DNA of 64,000 bases from Setoptus koraiensis. Taxonomy: Eukaryota; Animalia; Arthropoda. The first letter of the stretch is position 1; the number at the start of each line of letters is the position of its first letter. A program made the position numbers and the translations under genes. The DNA lies in the NCBI GenBank assembly GCA_048013815.1, contig CM106585.1, forward strand, positions 13,144,001 to 13,208,000, given 5' to 3'. A model generated the notes under the pieces. It was not told the origin of the DNA, did not search any database, and saw nothing but the letters and a program-made list of their open reading frames with translations. Below are positions 32,449-39,052 of this stretch, in pieces.

Positions 32449-33031
32449 TGTGTTGTTTGTTACATTTGGGCGCGCACACCCACACAAATAGGGTACAATA
32501 TGTTGCTTGCTTGTGTAATTGTTGTTGGCGTCTCCCGTCGTTAATTAGTGGTGGCGCCGACGCTTCCGCTTCGCTCCAAATGCGCGCCGCTCCATACATA
32601 CACATGACCATATACATGTGACAGATAACACGGGACAGGATAATTGTGTGTGTGTGTGTGTGTTATAAATATGCTACGCCTACGCAATTCCGCTCACCTG
32701 TCGGTCGGCGGCGGGCGCGCGGCTCTTCAGCGAGGCTTGCCCAAATACCCGGATGGGGCCGGATTCGAGCGGCCACTGACATTTGTTAGACAAATTTTGT
32801 TTATCATGGGTGTGCTTGTTACAATTGAGTGTTTTGCTTAATTATCACATACGTATATGTACACAGATATATCCGGCATATATCGTCGTTCAGTGCGTTG
32901 CTGTTGCGTTGCAAGAGAGAGCGCCATTTCGGCCATTTCGGCCAACTCGGCCAATTCGGCCAACAGCGGCCAGCTGCTCAAGTTATTTGAATCAAATAAC
33001 AACAAATACCCTTGCCGCGGCATATCCGACG

Positions 33032-33089
33032 CGGATAATCCGCGCTAGGATTATCCGAGCGATGGGGCCCGCTCGTTTCGGGCCCCATC
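33032..33089 (-). other. Two adjacent perfect stem-loops immediately 3' of the receptor stop codon
   Basis: 33061-33089 is gatggggcccg/cgggccccatc (11 bp, 7-nt loop). 33032-33057 is cggataatcc/ggattatccg (10 bp, 6-nt loop). Confidence 0.75.
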
Positions 33090-33121
33090 AGAGTTTCTCA
33101 GAGTGCCAAAGTGCCACCAAA

Positions 33122-36100
33122 TCACGAGTTGGTCACCAGACCGATCTCCTGAGTGGACCGGTAGGTGCAGTTGTAATGATTGTCGTTGGGCCTGTTCACG
33201 CGCAGACATTTCAGATCCTTGCAACAGCAAAACATCCATTGCAATGTCTTCTTGAAGGCATCGCGAAATTCACTATTGAAGTAGGCATAAATGAGCGGAT
33301 TGAGGGTAGAGTTGAAATACCCAATCCAAAACAGTATTGTCACCATAATGCGGGGCACGATGCCCTCGCAGTGCTTGCCGCAAACGTGCATCGAGGTGTA
33401 CCAGCTGAAGAAGGGCAACCAGCACAATATGAAGGCACCCATGATAATGCCCAGGGTCTTGGCGGCCTTGTGCTCGCGCTTCATTTTGCTGATGCTCCGC
33501 TTGGTGGGCGTAGACTGACCGCTCTCGCAATCGTCGTTGTTGTGCTGTTGTTGCTGATGTTGTTGCTGCTGTTGTTGTTGGTGTTGTTGGTGCTGTTGTT
33601 GATGCAAATTGGCTTGGTGTTGTTGATTGTTGTTGTTGTCGTTGCCAACAATCAGCGGGCTGCACTGTTGCTGCGTGACCGCGTCGCCGCCGCCGCCCGT
33701 ATTGTTGTTGGTTCCGGACACCATTTCCATGTTGGCCGCACCGGGTGCCGGGTTGCCGGTTGTTGTGCCCGTCGACAGCTCGTGCTGGCTGCGGCTCAGC
33801 CCGACCGCGCAGCCCGTCGGCGTGCTGGGTCCCGTGTAGGCGTTTTGGCTCAATAGGAGGGCTGTTTGGCTTGCTTGGCTGGTGGCGCCAACGGTGTTGC
33901 CGCTTGTGGCGGCCGATGTCGCCGTTGAGGCATCGGAGGTGTGCCTGGGCAGGGCCGCGTCGCTGGGATTTGCGCCAGCGGGCCGGCCGCTCGCCAAATG
34001 TTGGCCCGGCTGGTGGTAGTGAACGGCGGGCTCCACCTGGCCGCCGCCGCCGATTGTGGTGGCCAGCGAGGGCGTGTTTGAGGGTCGATGGTGCGCGGTT
34101 GGCGCGCCCATTTGCACCGAATTTGCCGCTTGTTGGTTGTTGTTGCGCTGCATTGGCTGCTGCTGCGGGTTGCGGTTGGCCGCGGTCAGCGCGGACTGAG
34201 CGGGCCCGCTGGCCGCGGACAGGTGAGTGGCCGCCGAGACGGACTTTGAGCGGTGCTGCTTGTGTTTGTGCTTATGCTTGTGCTTGTGCTGCTGATGGTG
34301 GTTGCCGTGGTGCGAGTGATGGTTTGGCGCAATCATCTTCTGAGTTTTGTAAATAAACTTTTCCTGTCTTGTGGCCTCAACGTAAATGCGCCAGTAAATG
34401 AACAACATTATGCAACAGGGTATCCAAAACGATATGGACGACGACACAATGGCGTACACCCGATTCACAACAAACTCGCACTCGTACGGGTGCCGCACGC
34501 GGTACTCTAAGTGGTCCGAGGTAGTGTACCAGCCATTAAAGATGGGTATGTAGGACAGCAACGCCGAGCTTATCCACACAATGGTCAGCATTATCACCAC
34601 GGTCTTGGTGGTGATTTTCATGGGATAATCCAGGGGGCGCATAATGGCGTAGAAGCGATCTATCGATATGCAGCATAGATGCAGTATGCTCGCGGTAGAG
34701 AACAGTACGTCGCACGCTGACCAAAAGTCACACACCCACTGATTGAATATCCAGCGGCCCGACAAAATAACGCTTGCGTTAAAAGTCATAGCGAACAGCG
34801 CCACCAAAATGTCAGCGCACGCCAGCGACACCACAAACCAATTTGTGGTGACGCGCAACTTCCTGTGCCGACACACGGACAATATCACCAGCGAGTTACC
34901 GAAAATGTCGCCCACTATTATTGCGGCCACTATGAAAAATGTCAAACAATAGAGCATCTGATCGGTGACATTCATTTGGCCGAACGACAGCTCCACGGGC
35001 TGCCGGTCGTCCGCTTGCGCGCCCTCCGACCGGTTGCCGTTGTCGGCCGCGAAGCTACGGTAGCCCGCCGACGCGTTATCGGCCCGCTGCTCGCCGCCGC
35101 CGCCGGCACTCGTCACTTCCGCCAGACCCGCGGCTAACTCGCCTGGGCCGGCGCCGCCCTGCACGGCCGCCTGGCCCAAGTCACCTGGCGGCGACAGGTA
35201 GCTGATTGTGGGCGCGTTCTGGTTTATGGTGGCCATGACGGCATTGTTGAGGCCCGCGTTGTCGTCGTAATAGAAACCGCTGGACGGCGCTGCCGGCAAC
35301 TGCTGCTGCTGCTGCGGCTGGTCCAGCTGACGGCGGGTCATGGCGGCGCTCGTTGGGCCAGTCGGGGCGGCCAGTCGCAGCCGCTTGAGCGGTTGGCCCG
35401 AGTGGCCGGCGCGCGACTCCGCAACAATATGCTGCCGTAAGTCGTCGTAATGGCCGCTCCATCTGGTTGGTGCGGTTGAGCTGTTGTTGTCGTCGGTGGC
35501 GCCGGCCGTGCCGTTCAGCCGCATTCTTGTCTCCGCTTGGGCCGCCTCGGCGGCGGCCAGTTGTGCGCCGCACCGGAAATGGGGCAGCCATTCAGGCGTC
35601 AGGGGGCCCAGGGCGGCAGGCCGCTTGTGGGTGTTTGGCACAAGCAAGAGATCAAACAAGCACAACAACAGCGCGTATATCAACAGTTTTTGCAGCGCCA
35701 ATCTCTTGCCGGCGTGTCCGCCACTTCCGGTTGTCGTGGACCATCGCCGAATGGTGTCCGGCTGATATCTGGCCGGCGCCCCATTGTTTCTCATCTTCTT
35801 CGCGTGCTTGCCACCGATTGATTGGGGCCCGTCGTTTTTGCGCTTCTCAGTTTTGTTGTTGTCAGTGTGTTGAGCCGGCGGCGCCTTGATAGCAGTTGCT
35901 CGAGCGGACAGCGTTCGCTGGACGGAAGTTGGCCCACTATTCACTGGGGTGCTTGTGGCGATCGCCGTCGTTGCGGTTGTCGGTGGTGGCGACAGTGAAG
36001 TCGTTGAGTGGGTCGACTCGTGCGACTGTGGACTAGATCGTTGTTGTTGTTGTTGTTGTTGTTGCTGTTGTTGCCGCTGTTGTTGTTGTTGTTGCTGCTG

Positions 36101-36708
36101 TTGATGTCGTTGTTGCCAGCCGCACACTTGTTGACCGGATAAATCAGGCGCGGTCTGCTCGTTGCTGCAACTGGCCGTGGATGTAAGCACGTTCTCGAAC
36201 CGGAAGTTGGAGGCCGCTGCCTCGTTGCTTCTCGCTGTTGGTGTCCATTGCGCTGCAGTGGCACGGCGTTTTTGTGATGCTGATGCTGTTGTTGCTGTTG
36301 TTGTTGCTGTTGTTGTTGTTGTTGTTGTTGTTGTTTTTGCTGTTGTTGTTGCTGCTGTTGGAATGTTGTCCGTTATCACTTTGTTACTATCACTCTTGAG
36401 AAGTGTCGTCGACGACGATAGCGGCGGCCAAGACGACGGCGACAGAGAACAACGATTGACAACAAATGGCATTCCGACTATGCCGTCATCTCTAGTTGTT
36501 TGTGAGCCTAGCGGACGACAACAAAAGCTCTGTTTGCCAGCTCTATTCGTTATTATGTGTGTATTGCAGTGTTTTTTCAACTTTTCACCAATTGTCAGTG
36601 GCGCTGTTACATGACGTCGACCGCTGCTGTCACTGCTGCACTCACATTGGCCAGGTGAGATCCGGAGGGGCCAACAACGACAGGTCGTTGTTGTCGTTCG
36701 CCCATTTC

Positions 36709-36741
<33 letters not shown>

Positions 36742-36744
36742 GTT

Positions 36745-36781
<37 letters not shown>

Positions 36782-38803
36782 TTGTTGCTGCTGTCGTTGT
36801 TGTTGCTGTTGTCGTTGTTGTTGTTGCTCGTTGCGGGCCGCACTAACGCCAAACTGGTCGCTCGCTTGCTCGGCGGGCCGGCCGTTGCTCTTCGGACGCC
36901 GGCCCCCGGGATTTGCGCCCCTAGGTGCGGCTGCAACCTCATTGGCCAGCCCTGTGTGCGTTCGTTTGCTGCTCTTTTCTATATGTTTGTATGATGTGTG
37001 TTGTTGTTGTTTTTGCTGGTCGTCGTTCTCTCTGGCGCTGTCAGCATCCGCTGAAAAAGTGCCTCTGGCCCCTTTGTGCGAGGCCAAGAAATTATTGTCG
37101 TTGTGCTTGTTTTCTTTATCCTCTTCGGTCAATTTTACTTCTTTTGTGCTTCTATTAATGCCAGTGCCTGCCGCTTGGCTGTCGTGCTGAGCTTGCTGAG
37201 CTGTTGAATTCTGCAGAAATGATGCAGACTGGTTAGTAGTGTTAGTAGTAGCTTGCTGCTTTGACAAACATTTCTTCCAATTACAACTGTTTGAGCGCCG
37301 GCAATTTAGTCTGAAAGAAACAACATCTAGAGGTCGCTGTCGCGCGCCTCTGCTGCCAGTATCACTATAACTATCTAGACACGTAGTCCATCTGCTAATA
37401 TCTGCTCCTAGCATCAGCCTGTCGATGTCAGTGTTGGCGCAACAATAGTCCAGAGTTAGTTGACCACTACTGTCGTCACCACCAGGTGAGCTTTTCGCTG
37501 GTTCACCTCGTGGCGAAACCAGCAGGCTCAGCAGGGAAACAGACAACGACGGCGTTACATTGCGTAACCAGCAGCACGATGATTGTGCTGCTTGGCGTGT
37601 GAGCTGAGCCGCTGAACTGTTGTTGTTGTTGTTACATAACAATAATAATCTAGTGCTGCTGGCGGATAAAGTGCTAAAGTCGCTGAGCCTCAAGGTGGGC
37701 CCAGAATTGACACAGCCATTGTGGCTAGAGGGCGCTCCTTCGTCTTCATTGAGTCGTCTATGGGAATGGCTCTCTGTTGTTGAAATTGTCGTTGTCGTCG
37801 TTGTTGTTGTGGTTGAATCGGTTTGCTCGAAATTGCTGAGCGGCGCGCCCACGCCTATGCCGTCATGATTATTTTCAACAATCCCTCTAGCGGTATTAAT
37901 ATTAAATTTGTGTTGAGTAGTCAAGCTGTTTTGTGCAATCAGAATATTTTGTGTATGCTCACACGGCCACCTGATGGTCGCCACCGGCGATTCTGACAAG
38001 TTGTGCGTTGTCTGTTGGCTGGGGCCGGGGCCGGCCACAGAGTCGTGCTGTTGGGGCCCCATCGTTGTCTGCCGTTGCTGACAATGACCGCTCACATCGC
38101 CACAACAAAAGCAGCAGCAATTTATCGCCAGCAGCAGCTCATTATCATCACAATTTAACAAGTTGACACATTTCACCTGTCTGTTCATGTTTACGACACT
38201 AACGGGGCCCTGCCGACAGGGGTCGTGGTCGCGACGATGATGAGCGTGACGGTTATGGTGATGTGGCGACCACAATGATGGCGATGATTCACTTGAGCAT
38301 AATACAGTGGCCGCCATAAACTCACTAACTTCCGGTTCCGGCGGCGCCGCTGCCGTTGCGTTGCATTGTCTCTTGTCTGACGGACTGTCGTGCTGCTCAC
38401 ATTGCTGCTGACACGTAACCGACGGTACCGGTAGCGGATTCACGCCGACGCGGCCCGGCGCCCGCTTGTCCGCTGTCGAGCCGGCCCGCTTGTCCGCTGT
38501 CGGGCCGGCCCGCTTAAGCGGCAGGGGCGACTTTGGGTCGGCGACTGGCACAGGTTTAAATGTTGTGGTTGCTTGCGCCAGCCGGAGCATGTGCTCGCGC
38601 GACAATTTGATTCTTTGAGATTTTTGAAATTGAGTATGAGATTGAGATGATCTGTGGTTGTGATCTGACCATGATTGGCTGGCCGCTGTCGATTTATGCC
38701 GGCCAGTGTTGTTGTTGTTGCTGTTGTTGTTGCTGTTGTTTGCGGGGGAACACAACAAAAGTTGCGCCCTGTCAGTGGAGTGGAATTGCGGGCCGGTTAT
38801 CAT
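33122..38803 (-). CDS. Octbeta2R: Beta-adrenergic-like octopamine receptor (class A GPCR), intronless ORF, 1893 aa from the first ATG
   Basis: The frame is open from an upstream TAA (38861-38863) to TGA at 33122-33124. The first ATG is at 38801-38803; the ORF track starts at a TTG. The C-terminal ~610 aa carry all aminergic 7TM motifs: GNSLV (TM1), SLACAD (TM2), CDVLFSTASILHLCCISIDRF (TM3, D3.32 at 34709-34711), WISS (TM4), SSSISFWIP (TM5), [24 protein letters not shown] (TM6) and FWIGYFNSTLNPLIYAYFN (TM7). MTFNASV, TASILHLCCIS and FWIGYFNS are typical of Octbeta receptors. The family call is firm; beta2 versus another beta paralogue and the true start codon are inferred. Confidence 0.9.
33275..34957 (-). 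other. 7TM domain of the octopamine receptor, including a ~300-aa third intracellular loop
   Basis: TM1 starts at about M1300 (34957) and the NPLIYAYFN of TM7 ends at about 33275. ICL3 runs from about 34380 to 33480 and is rich in His, Gln, Asn, Gly and Thr. Confidence 0.9.
35639..35701 (-). other. Extra hydrophobic helix (TM0 or internal signal peptide) in the receptor N-terminus
   Basis: LALQKLLIYALLLCLFDLLLV (aa 1052-1072) is preceded by GKR. An in-frame Met lies 31 aa upstream (M1021, 35792-35794, context aagATGa). The segment between it and TM1 has six N-glycosylation sequons (NGT, NNS, NSS, NAS, NRS, NVT). Confidence 0.6.
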
Positions 38804-39011
38804 TGCGTTGGCTGGCTGTTGGCTGTCAATTGTACACAACAGTCTATGTAACAACGTGATTTATGTCTCATTTATTCACTTAATTTAATTTTAAATTTTC
38901 TGTTGTTGCCGCTGCGATTCATATTTGCGCTGTAATTGTTATGCGTTGTTGCGTGATATGTAACTAGTGTAATGATACAATGCTAAAATTATCATCAATG
39001 TGCAATATGAG

Positions 39012-39052
<41 letters not shown>

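What the first reader, a model, noticed from the sequence alone, without database searches (positions are those of the whole stretch)
34958..38860. Octopamine receptor with a ~1,300-codon N-terminal extension: possible 8-TM aminergic GPCR with a giant cytoplasmic head
Seen: the receptor frame stays open for about 3.9 kb upstream of TM1. The other minus-strand frames there break into ORFs of at most ~110 aa, and nothing in the non-coding flanks exceeds ~225 aa. The extension holds one clear 21-aa hydrophobic helix (aa 1052-1072), followed by a sequon-rich 227-aa segment. Established: aminergic class A receptors normally have N-termini of tens to a few hundred residues and 7 TMs. Inference: translation from the first ATG would give a ~1,030-aa mostly disordered, probably cytoplasmic domain, then TM0, a glycosylated ectodomain and the 7TM core. 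I know of no such architecture for Octbeta receptors. Basic residues occur on both sides of the helix (GKR before, HKR after), so the orientation is not certain.
Basis: partly seen in the sequence, partly recalled or inferred. Interest (0 to 1): 0.75.

Follow-up and report, generated by a model that had tools for sequence, protein, structure and literature searches.

The report
Mite octopamine receptor with giant head
A gall-mite gene for an adrenaline-type (octopamine) receptor really carries about 1,290 extra codons ahead of its seven-helix core. Related mites keep the same layout: a short conserved start motif, a long floppy spacer, an extra membrane helix and a sugar-decorated outer segment. 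The receptor is therefore probably made with a large inner "head" that no described receptor of this kind has.

Summary
On the minus strand, 1,301 codons upstream of TM1 have no stop, against 43 and 67 stops in the other two frames.

The core is a beta-adrenergic-like octopamine receptor (best PDB match: octopamine b2 receptor, E 6e-144). The genome is an eriophyoid mite, probably Setoptus koraiensis (48.8 Mb, 2 chromosomes).

The extension looks translated:
- Five other eriophyoid loci keep one uninterrupted frame of 963-1,559 codons.
- That frame runs from a conserved 16-residue motif (RIKLSRExMxRLA) to the receptor.
- The motif is kept through synonymous codon changes.
- All but one locus with enough upstream sequence carry a basic flank plus a hydrophobic helix (TM0) and an ectodomain motif (LxxAV[LM]AT).

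Everything between these landmarks is unalignable low-complexity sequence with no relatives among 1.84 billion proteins.

Dipteran Octbeta3R long forms are long because of their third intracellular loop, not their N-terminus. Non-eriophyoid mites lack TM0.

Unresolved: whether TM0 stays as an eighth helix or is cut by signal peptidase, and whether a short isoform starts at Met 35794.

Caveats: two loci have a frame break after the motif, and one lacks the whole module.

The scan noted similar giant extensions on other genes of this genome (GPB5, Robo-like, Kekkon, AChE, PDE3), but not at this locus.

Verdict: new variant of a known kind; interest 0.6.

The parts
33122..38803 (-). Whole intronless CDS from the first ATG (38803) to the stop codon (33122-33124); 1,893 aa
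   Evidence: frame 0 has the best codon-usage score of all six frames in every 300-codon window
38567..38614 (-). Conserved N-terminal motif RIKLSREHMLRLAQAT (aa 64-79)
   Evidence: Alignment A1 of 8 species. An HMM built without the window hits here at E 7e-7, next best 0.45. The 9-mer SQRIKLSRE is shared with L003; 0 of 300 shuffles reach it. 161 of 266 identical-residue codon pairs use different codons. The motif is unique in the window's own genome.
38102..38119 (-). Cysteine string CCCFCC (aa 229-234) in the head; possible palmitoylation site (inference)
   Evidence: clusters of this kind occur only in this window and in Fragariocoptes (CHCCYCCRCCCF, CCRCC)
35696..38566 (-). About 960 aa of fast-evolving low-complexity spacer (S/Q/T/A/R/N-rich, with poly-Q and poly-T tracts)
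   Evidence: No Pfam domain. No relatives in 1.84 billion representatives except poly-Q matches. Not alignable between species. Tandem repeats here nearly all have periods that are multiples of 3.
35792..35794 (-). Internal in-frame ATG (Met 1004), 36 aa before TM0; candidate alternative start that would make TM0 an N-terminal signal peptide
35636..35695 (-). TM0: LQKLLIYALLLCLFDLLLVP, preceded by GKRLALQK; internal signal-anchor or signal sequence
   Evidence: KD 2.19-2.56. Present in every eriophyoid sequence with enough N-terminus except L007, and absent in non-eriophyoid mites. AF2 predicts a helix at pLDDT 62-69.
34958..35635 (-). About 230-aa presumed extracellular segment with 6 sequons
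35210..35251 (-). Conserved ectodomain motif LNNAVMATINQNAP (relatives: LSRAVLATMSTQAP)
   Evidence: Collinear local alignments; AF2 helix at residues 179-191 of the model, pLDDT about 55
33125..34957 (-). 7TM core (TM1-TM7) with an ICL3 of about 310 aa and a C-tail; beta-adrenergic-like octopamine receptor
   Evidence: Pfam 7tm_1 E 1.7e-57; PDB 9m55 'octopamine b2 receptor' E 5.7e-144; AF2 pLDDT 84-94 in the helices

Best explanation
This is the single-exon gene of an eriophyoid-mite beta-adrenergic-like octopamine receptor (Octbeta2R-type).

Its coding sequence starts about 3.9 kb upstream of TM1, at or near ATG 38803. The product is built as follows:
1. A conserved basic amphipathic N-terminal motif.
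2. About 960 residues of rapidly evolving disordered spacer, with a cysteine string.
3. A basic flank plus a hydrophobic helix, TM0.
4. A glycosylated segment of about 230 aa with one conserved helix.
5. The 7TM core.

TM0 acts as an internal start-transfer sequence inserted N-in/C-out. It keeps the large head in the cytosol and delivers the proximal N-tail to the lumen, so that TM1 can take its normal orientation. A head of 350 or more residues could not be translocated by TM1 alone, which would explain why TM0 occurs only where the extension does.

In this species TM0 has no good signal-peptidase site, and a long N-terminal domain generally disfavours cleavage. I therefore commit to an uncleaved eighth helix: an 8-TM receptor with a tethered cytoplasmic head.

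Shown: the frame is conserved, the motif is under protein-level constraint, TM0 and the ectodomain motif are conserved, and the core belongs to the receptor family.

Inferred: topology, non-cleavage, and any role of the head (trafficking, scaffolding or regulation through the motif and palmitoylated cysteines).
For: Open frame and coding signal:
- 0 stops in 1,301 codons against 43 and 67 in the other frames.
- The receptor frame scores best of six frames in every 300-codon window, with codon usage trained on other genes of this genome.
- Tandem repeats inside the ORF have periods 3/6/9/12/15/24, while the flanks have mixed periods.

Conservation across species:
- Five other loci (L001-L005) have one continuous frame of 963-1,559 codons. 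The motif lies 21-82 aa from the start of the frame, and the other frames have 14-78 stops.
- Three 'short' relatives are truncated contigs whose frame stays open to the contig edge.
- The motif alignment covers 8 species. Serine is encoded by TCG here and AGC elsewhere, and arginine by AGA versus CGG. 161 of 266 identical-residue codon pairs differ, and codon position 3 is the most variable.
- An HMM built without the window hits the window ORF at E 7e-7.

TM0:
- KD is 2.0 or more in all eriophyoid sequences that reach that far (L007 excepted), with K/R richer upstream in 9 of 11 and equal in the other two.
- Five species have no Met within 200 aa upstream, so TM0 cannot be an N-terminal signal peptide there.
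- Non-eriophyoid mites lack it.

Receptor core:
- Best PDB match is the octopamine b2 receptor.
- D3.32, the TM5 serines, CWxP and NPxxY are visible in the translation.
Against: - There is no transcript, ribosome or peptide evidence. The Setoptus annotation used no RNA-seq.
- Two of eight loci (L006, L020) have the motif in a different frame from the receptor. In L020 the break coincides with a 4-nt insertion relative to L004. The link between motif and receptor is therefore not strictly kept, or those assemblies contain errors.
- One related locus (L007) has only 55 codons of open frame before TM1 (about 45 aa from its first Met) and none of the three landmarks within 6 kb.
- TM0's hydrophobic core of 14-20 residues (my reading), and the AXA-like sites after it in most relatives, look more like a cleavable signal peptide than a stable TM helix.
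- Six species, this one included, have a Met 11-36 aa before TM0.
- AF2 gives TM0 only moderate confidence and no confident packing.
- Scan notes report the same kind of extension ahead of secreted proteins in this genome. A secreted protein cannot stay anchored, so cleavage may be the general rule.
Confidence: 0.45

Rival explanations
1. The long ORF is translated, but TM0 works as an internal cleavable signal sequence. Signal peptidase cuts after it. The mature receptor is then an ordinary 7-TM protein with a glycosylated N-terminus of about 230 aa. The head plus TM0 is a separate membrane-anchored fragment that is either degraded or has its own role. Apart from the motif, only the readability of the spacer is under selection.
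For: - Most relatives have small residues at -3/-1 just after the hydrophobic core...LSATA|ISP...LSRA|HPQ...SGVA|RPN...AAGRA|HQP (sequences).
- The hydrophobic cores are 14-20 residues, which is signal-peptide-like.
- The spacer is unalignable and varies in length from about 300 to about 960 aa.
- Scan notes describe the same pattern ahead of secreted proteins such as GPB5 and AChE in this genome (not tested here).
Against: - This window's own TM0 is followed by PNTHKRPAALGP, with no acceptable -3/-1 pair that avoids Pro at +1 (my reading).
- Large N-terminal domains generally convert signals into uncleaved anchors (textbook knowledge, not tested).
- The motif and the cysteine string suggest that the head is more than filler.
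Confidence: 0.25
2. The functional receptor starts at Met 1004 (ATG 35794), from an internal promoter. TM0 is then a normal N-terminal signal peptide with a 36-aa n-region. The upstream 1,003 codons belong to a rarer long isoform or to a translated leader, not to the main product.
For: - A Met lies 11-36 aa before TM0 in 6 of 11 sequences.
- GC3 rises from 0.29-0.65 in the head to 0.64-0.84 from about codon 1040 onwards.
- L020 and L006 show that the motif can be uncoupled from the rest of the frame.
- L007 shows that the core can exist without the module.
Against: - Five species have no Met for more than 200 aa before TM0.
- An untranslated leader gives no reason for 350-1,000 open codons in six species, or for protein-level conservation of the motif.
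- Low GC3 is normal for coding sequence in this genome: other GPCR ORFs show 0.29-0.5.
- Enrichment of Met near TM0 is weak. It is 7 of 13 if P0004, whose Met lies at the start of the helix, is also counted, against about 30% expected; my binomial estimate is p about 0.06.
Confidence: 0.2
3. The module (motif, spacer, TM0, ectodomain motif) was once a separate upstream gene for a type II single-pass membrane protein. It fused by read-through to the receptor gene in the eriophyoid ancestor during genome streamlining. The head would then keep that protein's own function.
For: - The topology fits without adjustment: a type II protein ends outside the cell, and a GPCR begins outside.
- The three landmarks are gained or lost together. 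They are absent in L007 and in non-eriophyoid mites.
- Eriophyoid genomes are strongly compacted (PMC11879100 abstract).
Against: - No stand-alone relative of the head was found in 1.84 billion representatives, in the Atlas or elsewhere in the window's own genome.
- No separate motif-bearing gene lies within 6 kb upstream of the L007 locus.
- The motif is too short to be traced in outgroups with the tools available here.
Confidence: 0.1

Closest known systems
Beta-adrenergic-like octopamine receptor Octbeta2R (PDB 9m55/9m57; mite and insect orthologues such as Dermatophagoides pteronyssinus Octbeta2R-like, 512 aa)
   Same: The 7TM core matches at E 5.7e-144. D3.32, the TM5 serine triad, CWxP and NPxxY are present. 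The best named database hits are mite 'Octbeta2R' entries.
   Different: Those receptors have N-termini of about 100-220 aa without any hydrophobic helix (KD 1.5 or less). This one has 1,290 aa before TM1, including TM0. Its DRY motif reads DRF.
Fragariocoptes setiger 'Octopamine receptor beta-2R, partial' (GenBank model, 1,480 aa; P0017 / L001)
   Same: Same architecture: motif RIRLSKRDMINLAKAS near the start, about 700 aa of spacer with cysteine strings, TM0, about 230 aa of ectodomain, then the 7TM core. The genomic frame is open for 1,559 codons.
   Different: The spacer sequence is unrelated. Its TM0 is followed by a good AXA site. The deposited model removes two in-frame stretches as predicted introns; the one I could check (207 nt, in the spacer) has weak splice signals. 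I found no paper discussing the extension.
Dipteran Octbeta3R long isoforms (D. melanogaster OCTB3_DROME 1,256 aa; up to about 1,650 aa in Musca)
   Same: Unusually long Octbeta-type receptors with large disordered regions.
   Different: Their extra length is a 700-800-aa third intracellular loop. Their N-termini are about 100-150 aa, with no TM0 and no motif.
Class A GPCRs with cleavable or pseudo signal peptides (endothelin B, CRF receptors; from my own knowledge, not tested)
   Same: A hydrophobic sequence ahead of a long extracellular N-tail helps translocate that tail.
   Different: In those receptors the signal sits at the very N-terminus. Here 350-1,040 residues precede it.
Eight-helix enzymerhodopsins (rhodopsin-guanylyl cyclase and rhodopsin-phosphodiesterase, which have an extra N-terminal TM0; from my own knowledge)
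   Same: A 7TM sensor with an extra N-terminal helix that places the N-terminus in the cytoplasm.
   Different: They have an unrelated microbial-rhodopsin fold, short N-terminal segments, and C-terminal effector domains. This is an analogy only.
Type II signal-anchor membrane proteins
   Same: Cytosolic N-terminal domain, basic flank, and a single N-in/C-out helix.
   Different: They end after the lumenal domain. Here the lumenal segment continues into a GPCR.

Membership tests
Class A (rhodopsin-like) GPCR | 7tm_1 domain above Pfam's gathering score | tested here: met
   PF00001 E 1.7e-57, 195 bits against a cut-off of 30.5. AF2 gives a confident seven-helix core.
Beta-adrenergic-like octopamine receptor (Octbeta) | Closest characterised relatives are Octbeta receptors rather than other aminergic receptors | tested here: met
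   PDB 9m55 'octopamine b2 receptor' at E 5.7e-144, against beta-2 adrenergic receptor at 2e-62. All named top hits are Octbeta1R/2R/3R.
Beta-adrenergic-like octopamine receptor (Octbeta) | Aminergic pocket and activation motifs: Asp3.32, TM5 Ser triad, D/ERY, CWxP, NPxxY | tested here: met
   Read from the translation: ACDVLFSTASI (D3.32), VSSSISFW (TM5 serines), CWLPFF, NPLIY. DRY is DRF here, a conservative variant.
Beta-adrenergic-like octopamine receptor (Octbeta) | Assignment to the beta-2R rather than beta-1R or beta-3R orthogroup | tested here: inconclusive
   The mite best hits are named beta-2R, but insect 1R, 2R and 3R all score within about 20 bits of each other. No tree was built.
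Beta-adrenergic-like octopamine receptor (Octbeta) | Octopamine binding and Gs/cAMP coupling | not testable with these tools
   Needs a ligand and cAMP assay.
GPCR with N-terminal cleavable signal peptide | Hydrophobic signal within about 40 aa of the initiator Met, and a -3/-1 cleavage site | tested here: not met
   From the first ATG the helix begins at aa 1037. It would be met only if Met 1004 were the start. No acceptable -3/-1 site follows it in this species. No SignalP run was available.
   Indirect evidence only: frame conservation in 6 species, a motif under protein-level constraint, codon-usage score and triplet-period repeats. There are no expression data.
   Charge bias favours N-in: K/R 3 before and 2 after here, 8/4, 6/2 and 5/2 in relatives. 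Retention versus cleavage cannot be decided computationally here.

The most novel reading that the evidence does not exclude
Eriophyoid mites make a true eight-helix aminergic GPCR. A conserved N-terminal motif and a palmitoylatable cysteine string sit on a giant disordered cytoplasmic head. That head is tethered through TM0 to the octopamine receptor and tunes its trafficking or signalling. This would be one instance of a lineage-wide habit of placing long translated leaders in front of signal sequences, which turns N-terminal signals into internal anchors in many membrane and secreted proteins.
Probability: 0.3. Interest if true: 0.75.

Novelty: new variant of a known kind. Interest (0 to 1): 0.6.

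Why it matters
Aminergic GPCRs are among the best-studied membrane proteins, and a 7-TM layout with an extracellular N-terminus is treated as invariant. A conserved lineage in which the receptor is synthesised behind 350-1,040 cytosolic residues and an extra helix would be a natural experiment on several questions:
- How GPCR topology is established.
- How much N-terminal load the insertion machinery tolerates.
- Whether a tethered cytoplasmic head can regulate an aminergic receptor.

Octbeta2R is also the target of amitraz-type acaricides in other mites and ticks (my own knowledge), so its true mature form in a crop-pest lineage has practical interest.

With the other extended genes noted in this genome, it points to a genome-wide peculiarity of translation-start or leader evolution in one of the most streamlined animal genomes.

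Tried and rejected
- **Word search with aa 1-1280.** Nothing found. The candidate list was probably swamped by poly-Q and poly-T words, so this says little.
- **Representative search of aa 1-1003.** Five hits at E 5e-6 to 7e-4, all on the poly-Q/R tract at 603-800. I treat them as low-complexity matches.
- **ESM Atlas.** No usable hit.
- **GC3 break near codon 1040.** I first read this as evidence against coding upstream. I rejected that because other genes of this genome have GC3 of 0.29-0.5, and the codon-usage score still favours the receptor frame.
- **Indel-length (mod 3) test on DNA alignments of the spacer.** This compared L002 with L004 and L004 with L020. Identity was only 55-63%, so the alignments are unreliable and the test is uninformative.
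- **GT-AG intron enumeration for L020 and L006.** About 100 compatible candidates at each locus, so it is not decisive. Homology on both sides of a 4-nt insertion in L020 argues for an indel rather than an intron.
- **Third word search for a closer relative.** It covered proteins of 1,042-3,314 aa. Only P0005 and P0017 appeared, so no dN/dS could be computed for this species' spacer.
- **Dipteran Octbeta3R long forms as precedent.** Rejected: their extra length lies in ICL3.
- **The genome search 'own' with the head as query.** It failed once and I did not repeat it. The motif profile search stood in for it.
- **Paper search for '8-TM GPCR'.** Nothing relevant.
- **AF2 model.** It adds little outside the 7TM core, where pLDDT is below 50.
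Full report
**1. Observation**

The minus strand carries an ORF at 33122..38854. Between 38860 and TM1 (about 34958) the receptor frame has no stop in 1,301 codons. The two other minus-strand frames have 43 and 67 stops. The plus-strand frames have 35-46 stops.

The first in-frame ATG is at 38803, 20 codons after the upstream stop. Pfam sees only 7tm_1, from residue 1302 counted from that ATG.

The extension holds one strong hydrophobic segment, at aa 1037-1056 (nt 35636-35695). It is followed by 233 residues with six N-x-S/T sequons.

**2. What the gene is and where it comes from**

The core matches the solved 'octopamine b2 receptor' (PDB 9m55) at E 5.7e-144, well ahead of vertebrate beta-adrenergic receptors. 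The aminergic pocket and activation motifs are visible in the translation, although DRY reads DRF.

The best named database relatives are mite Octbeta2R entries from Fragariocoptes setiger and Dermatophagoides.

The window's assembly has 48.76 Mb in two contigs, one of 24,533,333 bp. This matches the published Setoptus koraiensis assembly, an eriophyoid with two chromosomes and N50 24.53 Mb (PMC11920263). The species assignment is an inference. That annotation used no RNA-seq. The gene is intronless as read here, in line with the intron-poor genomes of this lineage (PMC11879100).

**3. Is the extension coding?**

Within the window:
- I trained codon usage on other GPCR ORFs of the same genome. 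With stops ignored, the receptor frame scores best of all six frames in every 300-codon window across the extension.
- Tandem repeats inside the ORF have periods of 3, 6, 9, 12, 15 or 24, apart from two weak period-8 rows. The upstream flank shows periods 2, 4, 7, 8, 10, 11, 13, 16 and others.
- GC3 falls from 0.64-0.84 downstream of about codon 1040 to 0.29-0.65 upstream. This is not evidence against coding, because other genes here have GC3 of 0.29-0.5.

Across species, I fetched the DNA around nine related proteins:
- Five loci (L001-L005) show a single stop-to-stop frame of 963-1,559 codons containing the receptor. Over the extension, the other two frames have 14-78 stops.
- Three apparently short relatives (P0001, P0004, P0011) are contig-truncated. 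Their frame stays open to the contig edge, which falls in poly-Q repeats in two of the three.

**4. Three conserved landmarks in an otherwise unalignable extension**

(a) *N-terminal motif.* A 16-residue motif, [RK][IL][KR]L[SN][RK][ER]x[MV]x[RN]L[ASG]xA, lies 21-83 aa from the start of the frame in six species. In two more species it lies in a neighbouring frame.
- An HMM built from the seven other species finds it in the window at E 7e-7 among 1,486 six-frame pieces; the next best is 0.45.
- The shared 9-mer SQRIKLSRE is reached by 0 of 300 shuffles.
- The residues are kept through synonymous changes: Ser is TCG versus AGC, Arg is AGA versus CGG, and Leu is TTG versus CTG or CTC.
- 161 of 266 identical-residue codon pairs use different codons, and codon position 3 varies most.
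- The constraint is therefore on the protein, not on DNA or RNA.
- The motif occurs nowhere else in this genome.

(b) *TM0.* It scores KD 2.0 or more in every eriophyoid sequence that extends that far (L007 excepted, see section 6). K/R is richer on the upstream side in 9 of 11 sequences and equal in the other two. Non-eriophyoid mite orthologues have nothing comparable.

(c) *Ectodomain motif.* LxxAV[LM]AT[MI]xxxAP lies between TM0 and TM1.

The two longest versions, this window and Fragariocoptes, also carry cysteine strings in the head.

Everything else is low-complexity sequence (S/Q/T/A/R/N-rich):
- It has no Pfam domain.
- It has no relatives among 1.84 billion representatives beyond poly-Q matches.
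- It has no Atlas neighbour.
- It shows no alignable similarity between species.

**5. Mechanism**

The head has no N-terminal signal sequence, and TM0 has the charge bias of an N-in/C-out helix. The consistent reading has three parts:
- The head stays in the cytosol.
- TM0 starts translocation of the segment of about 230 aa that carries the sequons.
- TM1 then inserts in its usual orientation.

This also explains why TM0 is found only with the extension. A short N-tail can be translocated by TM1 alone, as in other mites. A leader of 350-1,040 residues cannot (established principle, not tested here).

AF2 on residues 1004-1893, with a 46-sequence alignment, gives three results:
- A confident 7TM core.
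- A helix for TM0 at pLDDT 62-69.
- A weaker helix on the ectodomain motif, with disorder elsewhere.

Whether TM0 remains is open. Most relatives have AXA-like sites after a 14-20-residue hydrophobic core. This window's TM0 is followed by PNTHKRPAALGP, which offers no acceptable site.

Five species have no Met within 200 aa upstream of TM0. In those species TM0 cannot be an N-terminal signal peptide made from an internal AUG. Six species, including this one (Met 1004, ATG 35794), do have such a Met.

I rate the alternatives as follows:
- Uncleaved 8-TM form: 0.45.
- Cleaved precursor: 0.25.
- Internal start as the main product: 0.2.
- The broader claim, that the extension is translated as part of the receptor precursor: about 0.75.

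**6. Caveats**

- L020 and L006 have the motif in a frame different from the receptor frame, with the two open stretches overlapping.
- In L020 the switch coincides with a 4-nt insertion relative to its close relative L004, with homology continuing on both sides. This is either an assembly error or a real uncoupling.
- L007 encodes a closely related core with only 55 codons of open frame before TM1 (about 45 aa from its first Met) and none of the landmarks within 6 kb. It may be a loss, a paralogue or a distant exon.
- No expression data exist.

**7. Comparison with what is known**

Dipteran Octbeta3R proteins of 1,000-1,650 aa are long because of a 700-800-aa ICL3. Their N-termini are about 100-150 aa, without a hydrophobic helix. 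They are not a precedent.

The Fragariocoptes GenBank model (1,480 aa) already contains the same architecture. Two in-frame stretches are removed from it as predicted introns. The one I could locate, 207 nt in the spacer, has weak splice signals.

I found no paper that discusses this architecture.

**8. Context in the genome**

A Pfam scan of the whole genome shows many class A GPCRs inside open frames of 1,100-2,600 aa. Some are LRR-type receptors with real ectodomains. One muscarinic-like receptor has 1,112 stop-free, S/T/N-rich codons before TM1, against 44 and 78 stops in the other frames.

Earlier notes of this scan describe giant N-terminal extensions ahead of internal signal sequences in GPB5, a Robo-like receptor, Kekkon, AChE and PDE3 of this same genome. 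I did not test those. They suggest that the octopamine receptor is one case of a lineage-wide habit. That makes the head less likely to be a receptor-specific invention, and it makes cleavage a serious rival. The gene-specific conserved motif still argues that this head is not mere filler.

**9. Verdict**

This is a new variant of a known receptor kind, conserved across eriophyoid mites and untested experimentally.

The contig is not human.

Noticed in passing
G000:C2:13427831-13431166 (+), read as L008:3332-6667: A muscarinic-acetylcholine-receptor-like GPCR (best PDB hits M3/M4/M5, E about 1e-37) has 1,112 stop-free S/T/N-rich codons before TM1, against 44 and 78 stops in the other frames. 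A basic run plus a weak hydrophobic segment (KSKRRRGRRRAGDFWSLVSCLTLISLQYSF) lies about 100 codons into the frame, but the first Met is at codon 248.
   Followed up: partly
G000, 21 PF00001 matches: About half of the class A GPCR matches in this 48.8-Mb genome lie in open frames of 1,100-2,600 aa. Some (L011, L013, L016) look like LRR-type receptors with 670-2,000-aa ectodomains. Others owe their length to loops or tails.
   Followed up: partly
L007:5977-7560 (Logan SRR23513771): A closely related receptor (P0003, 71% identical to the window in the best local alignment) has only 55 codons of open frame before TM1 (about 45 aa from its first Met). No motif, TM0 or ectodomain motif lies within 6 kb on either strand. 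It may be a loss of the module, a paralogue or a distant upstream exon.
   Followed up: partly
L020:1303-1689 and L006:4406-5215: In two species the N-terminal motif lies in an ORF that overlaps the start of the receptor frame in a different phase. In L020 the switch coincides with a 4-nt insertion relative to L004. Both overlaps also contain perfect CAG|GT(A/G)AGT donor-like sites.
   Followed up: partly
window 32783-33856 (+) and 33745-34356 (+): Antisense ORFs of 357 and 203 aa run opposite the receptor's ICL3 region. They are probably a by-product of CAG/CAA-rich, GC3-rich coding sequence, whose reverse complement is poor in stops.
   Followed up: no
window 24000-50000: The receptor ORF is the only ORF of 200 aa or more in about 26 kb (antisense ORFs aside). 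That is a large gene-poor neighbourhood for a genome with about 8 kb per gene.
   Followed up: no
window 39013-39051; 3' ends of L022, L023, L025: A (CA/GT)n microsatellite lies about 200 bp upstream of the first ATG. Three other species' contigs break in (CA)n repeats just downstream of the orthologous gene.
   Followed up: no
window about 34640 (-), aa 1386-1388: The DRY motif at the end of TM3 reads DRF here. The other eriophyoid orthologues listed have DRY.
   Followed up: no
L001:7234-7440: The GenBank Fragariocoptes model removes a 207-nt in-frame 'intron' that encodes the cysteine string CHCCYCCRCCCF. Its acceptor context (GAAAACGAAAG|tg) is poor, so the intron may be a gene-prediction artefact.
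   Followed up: partly
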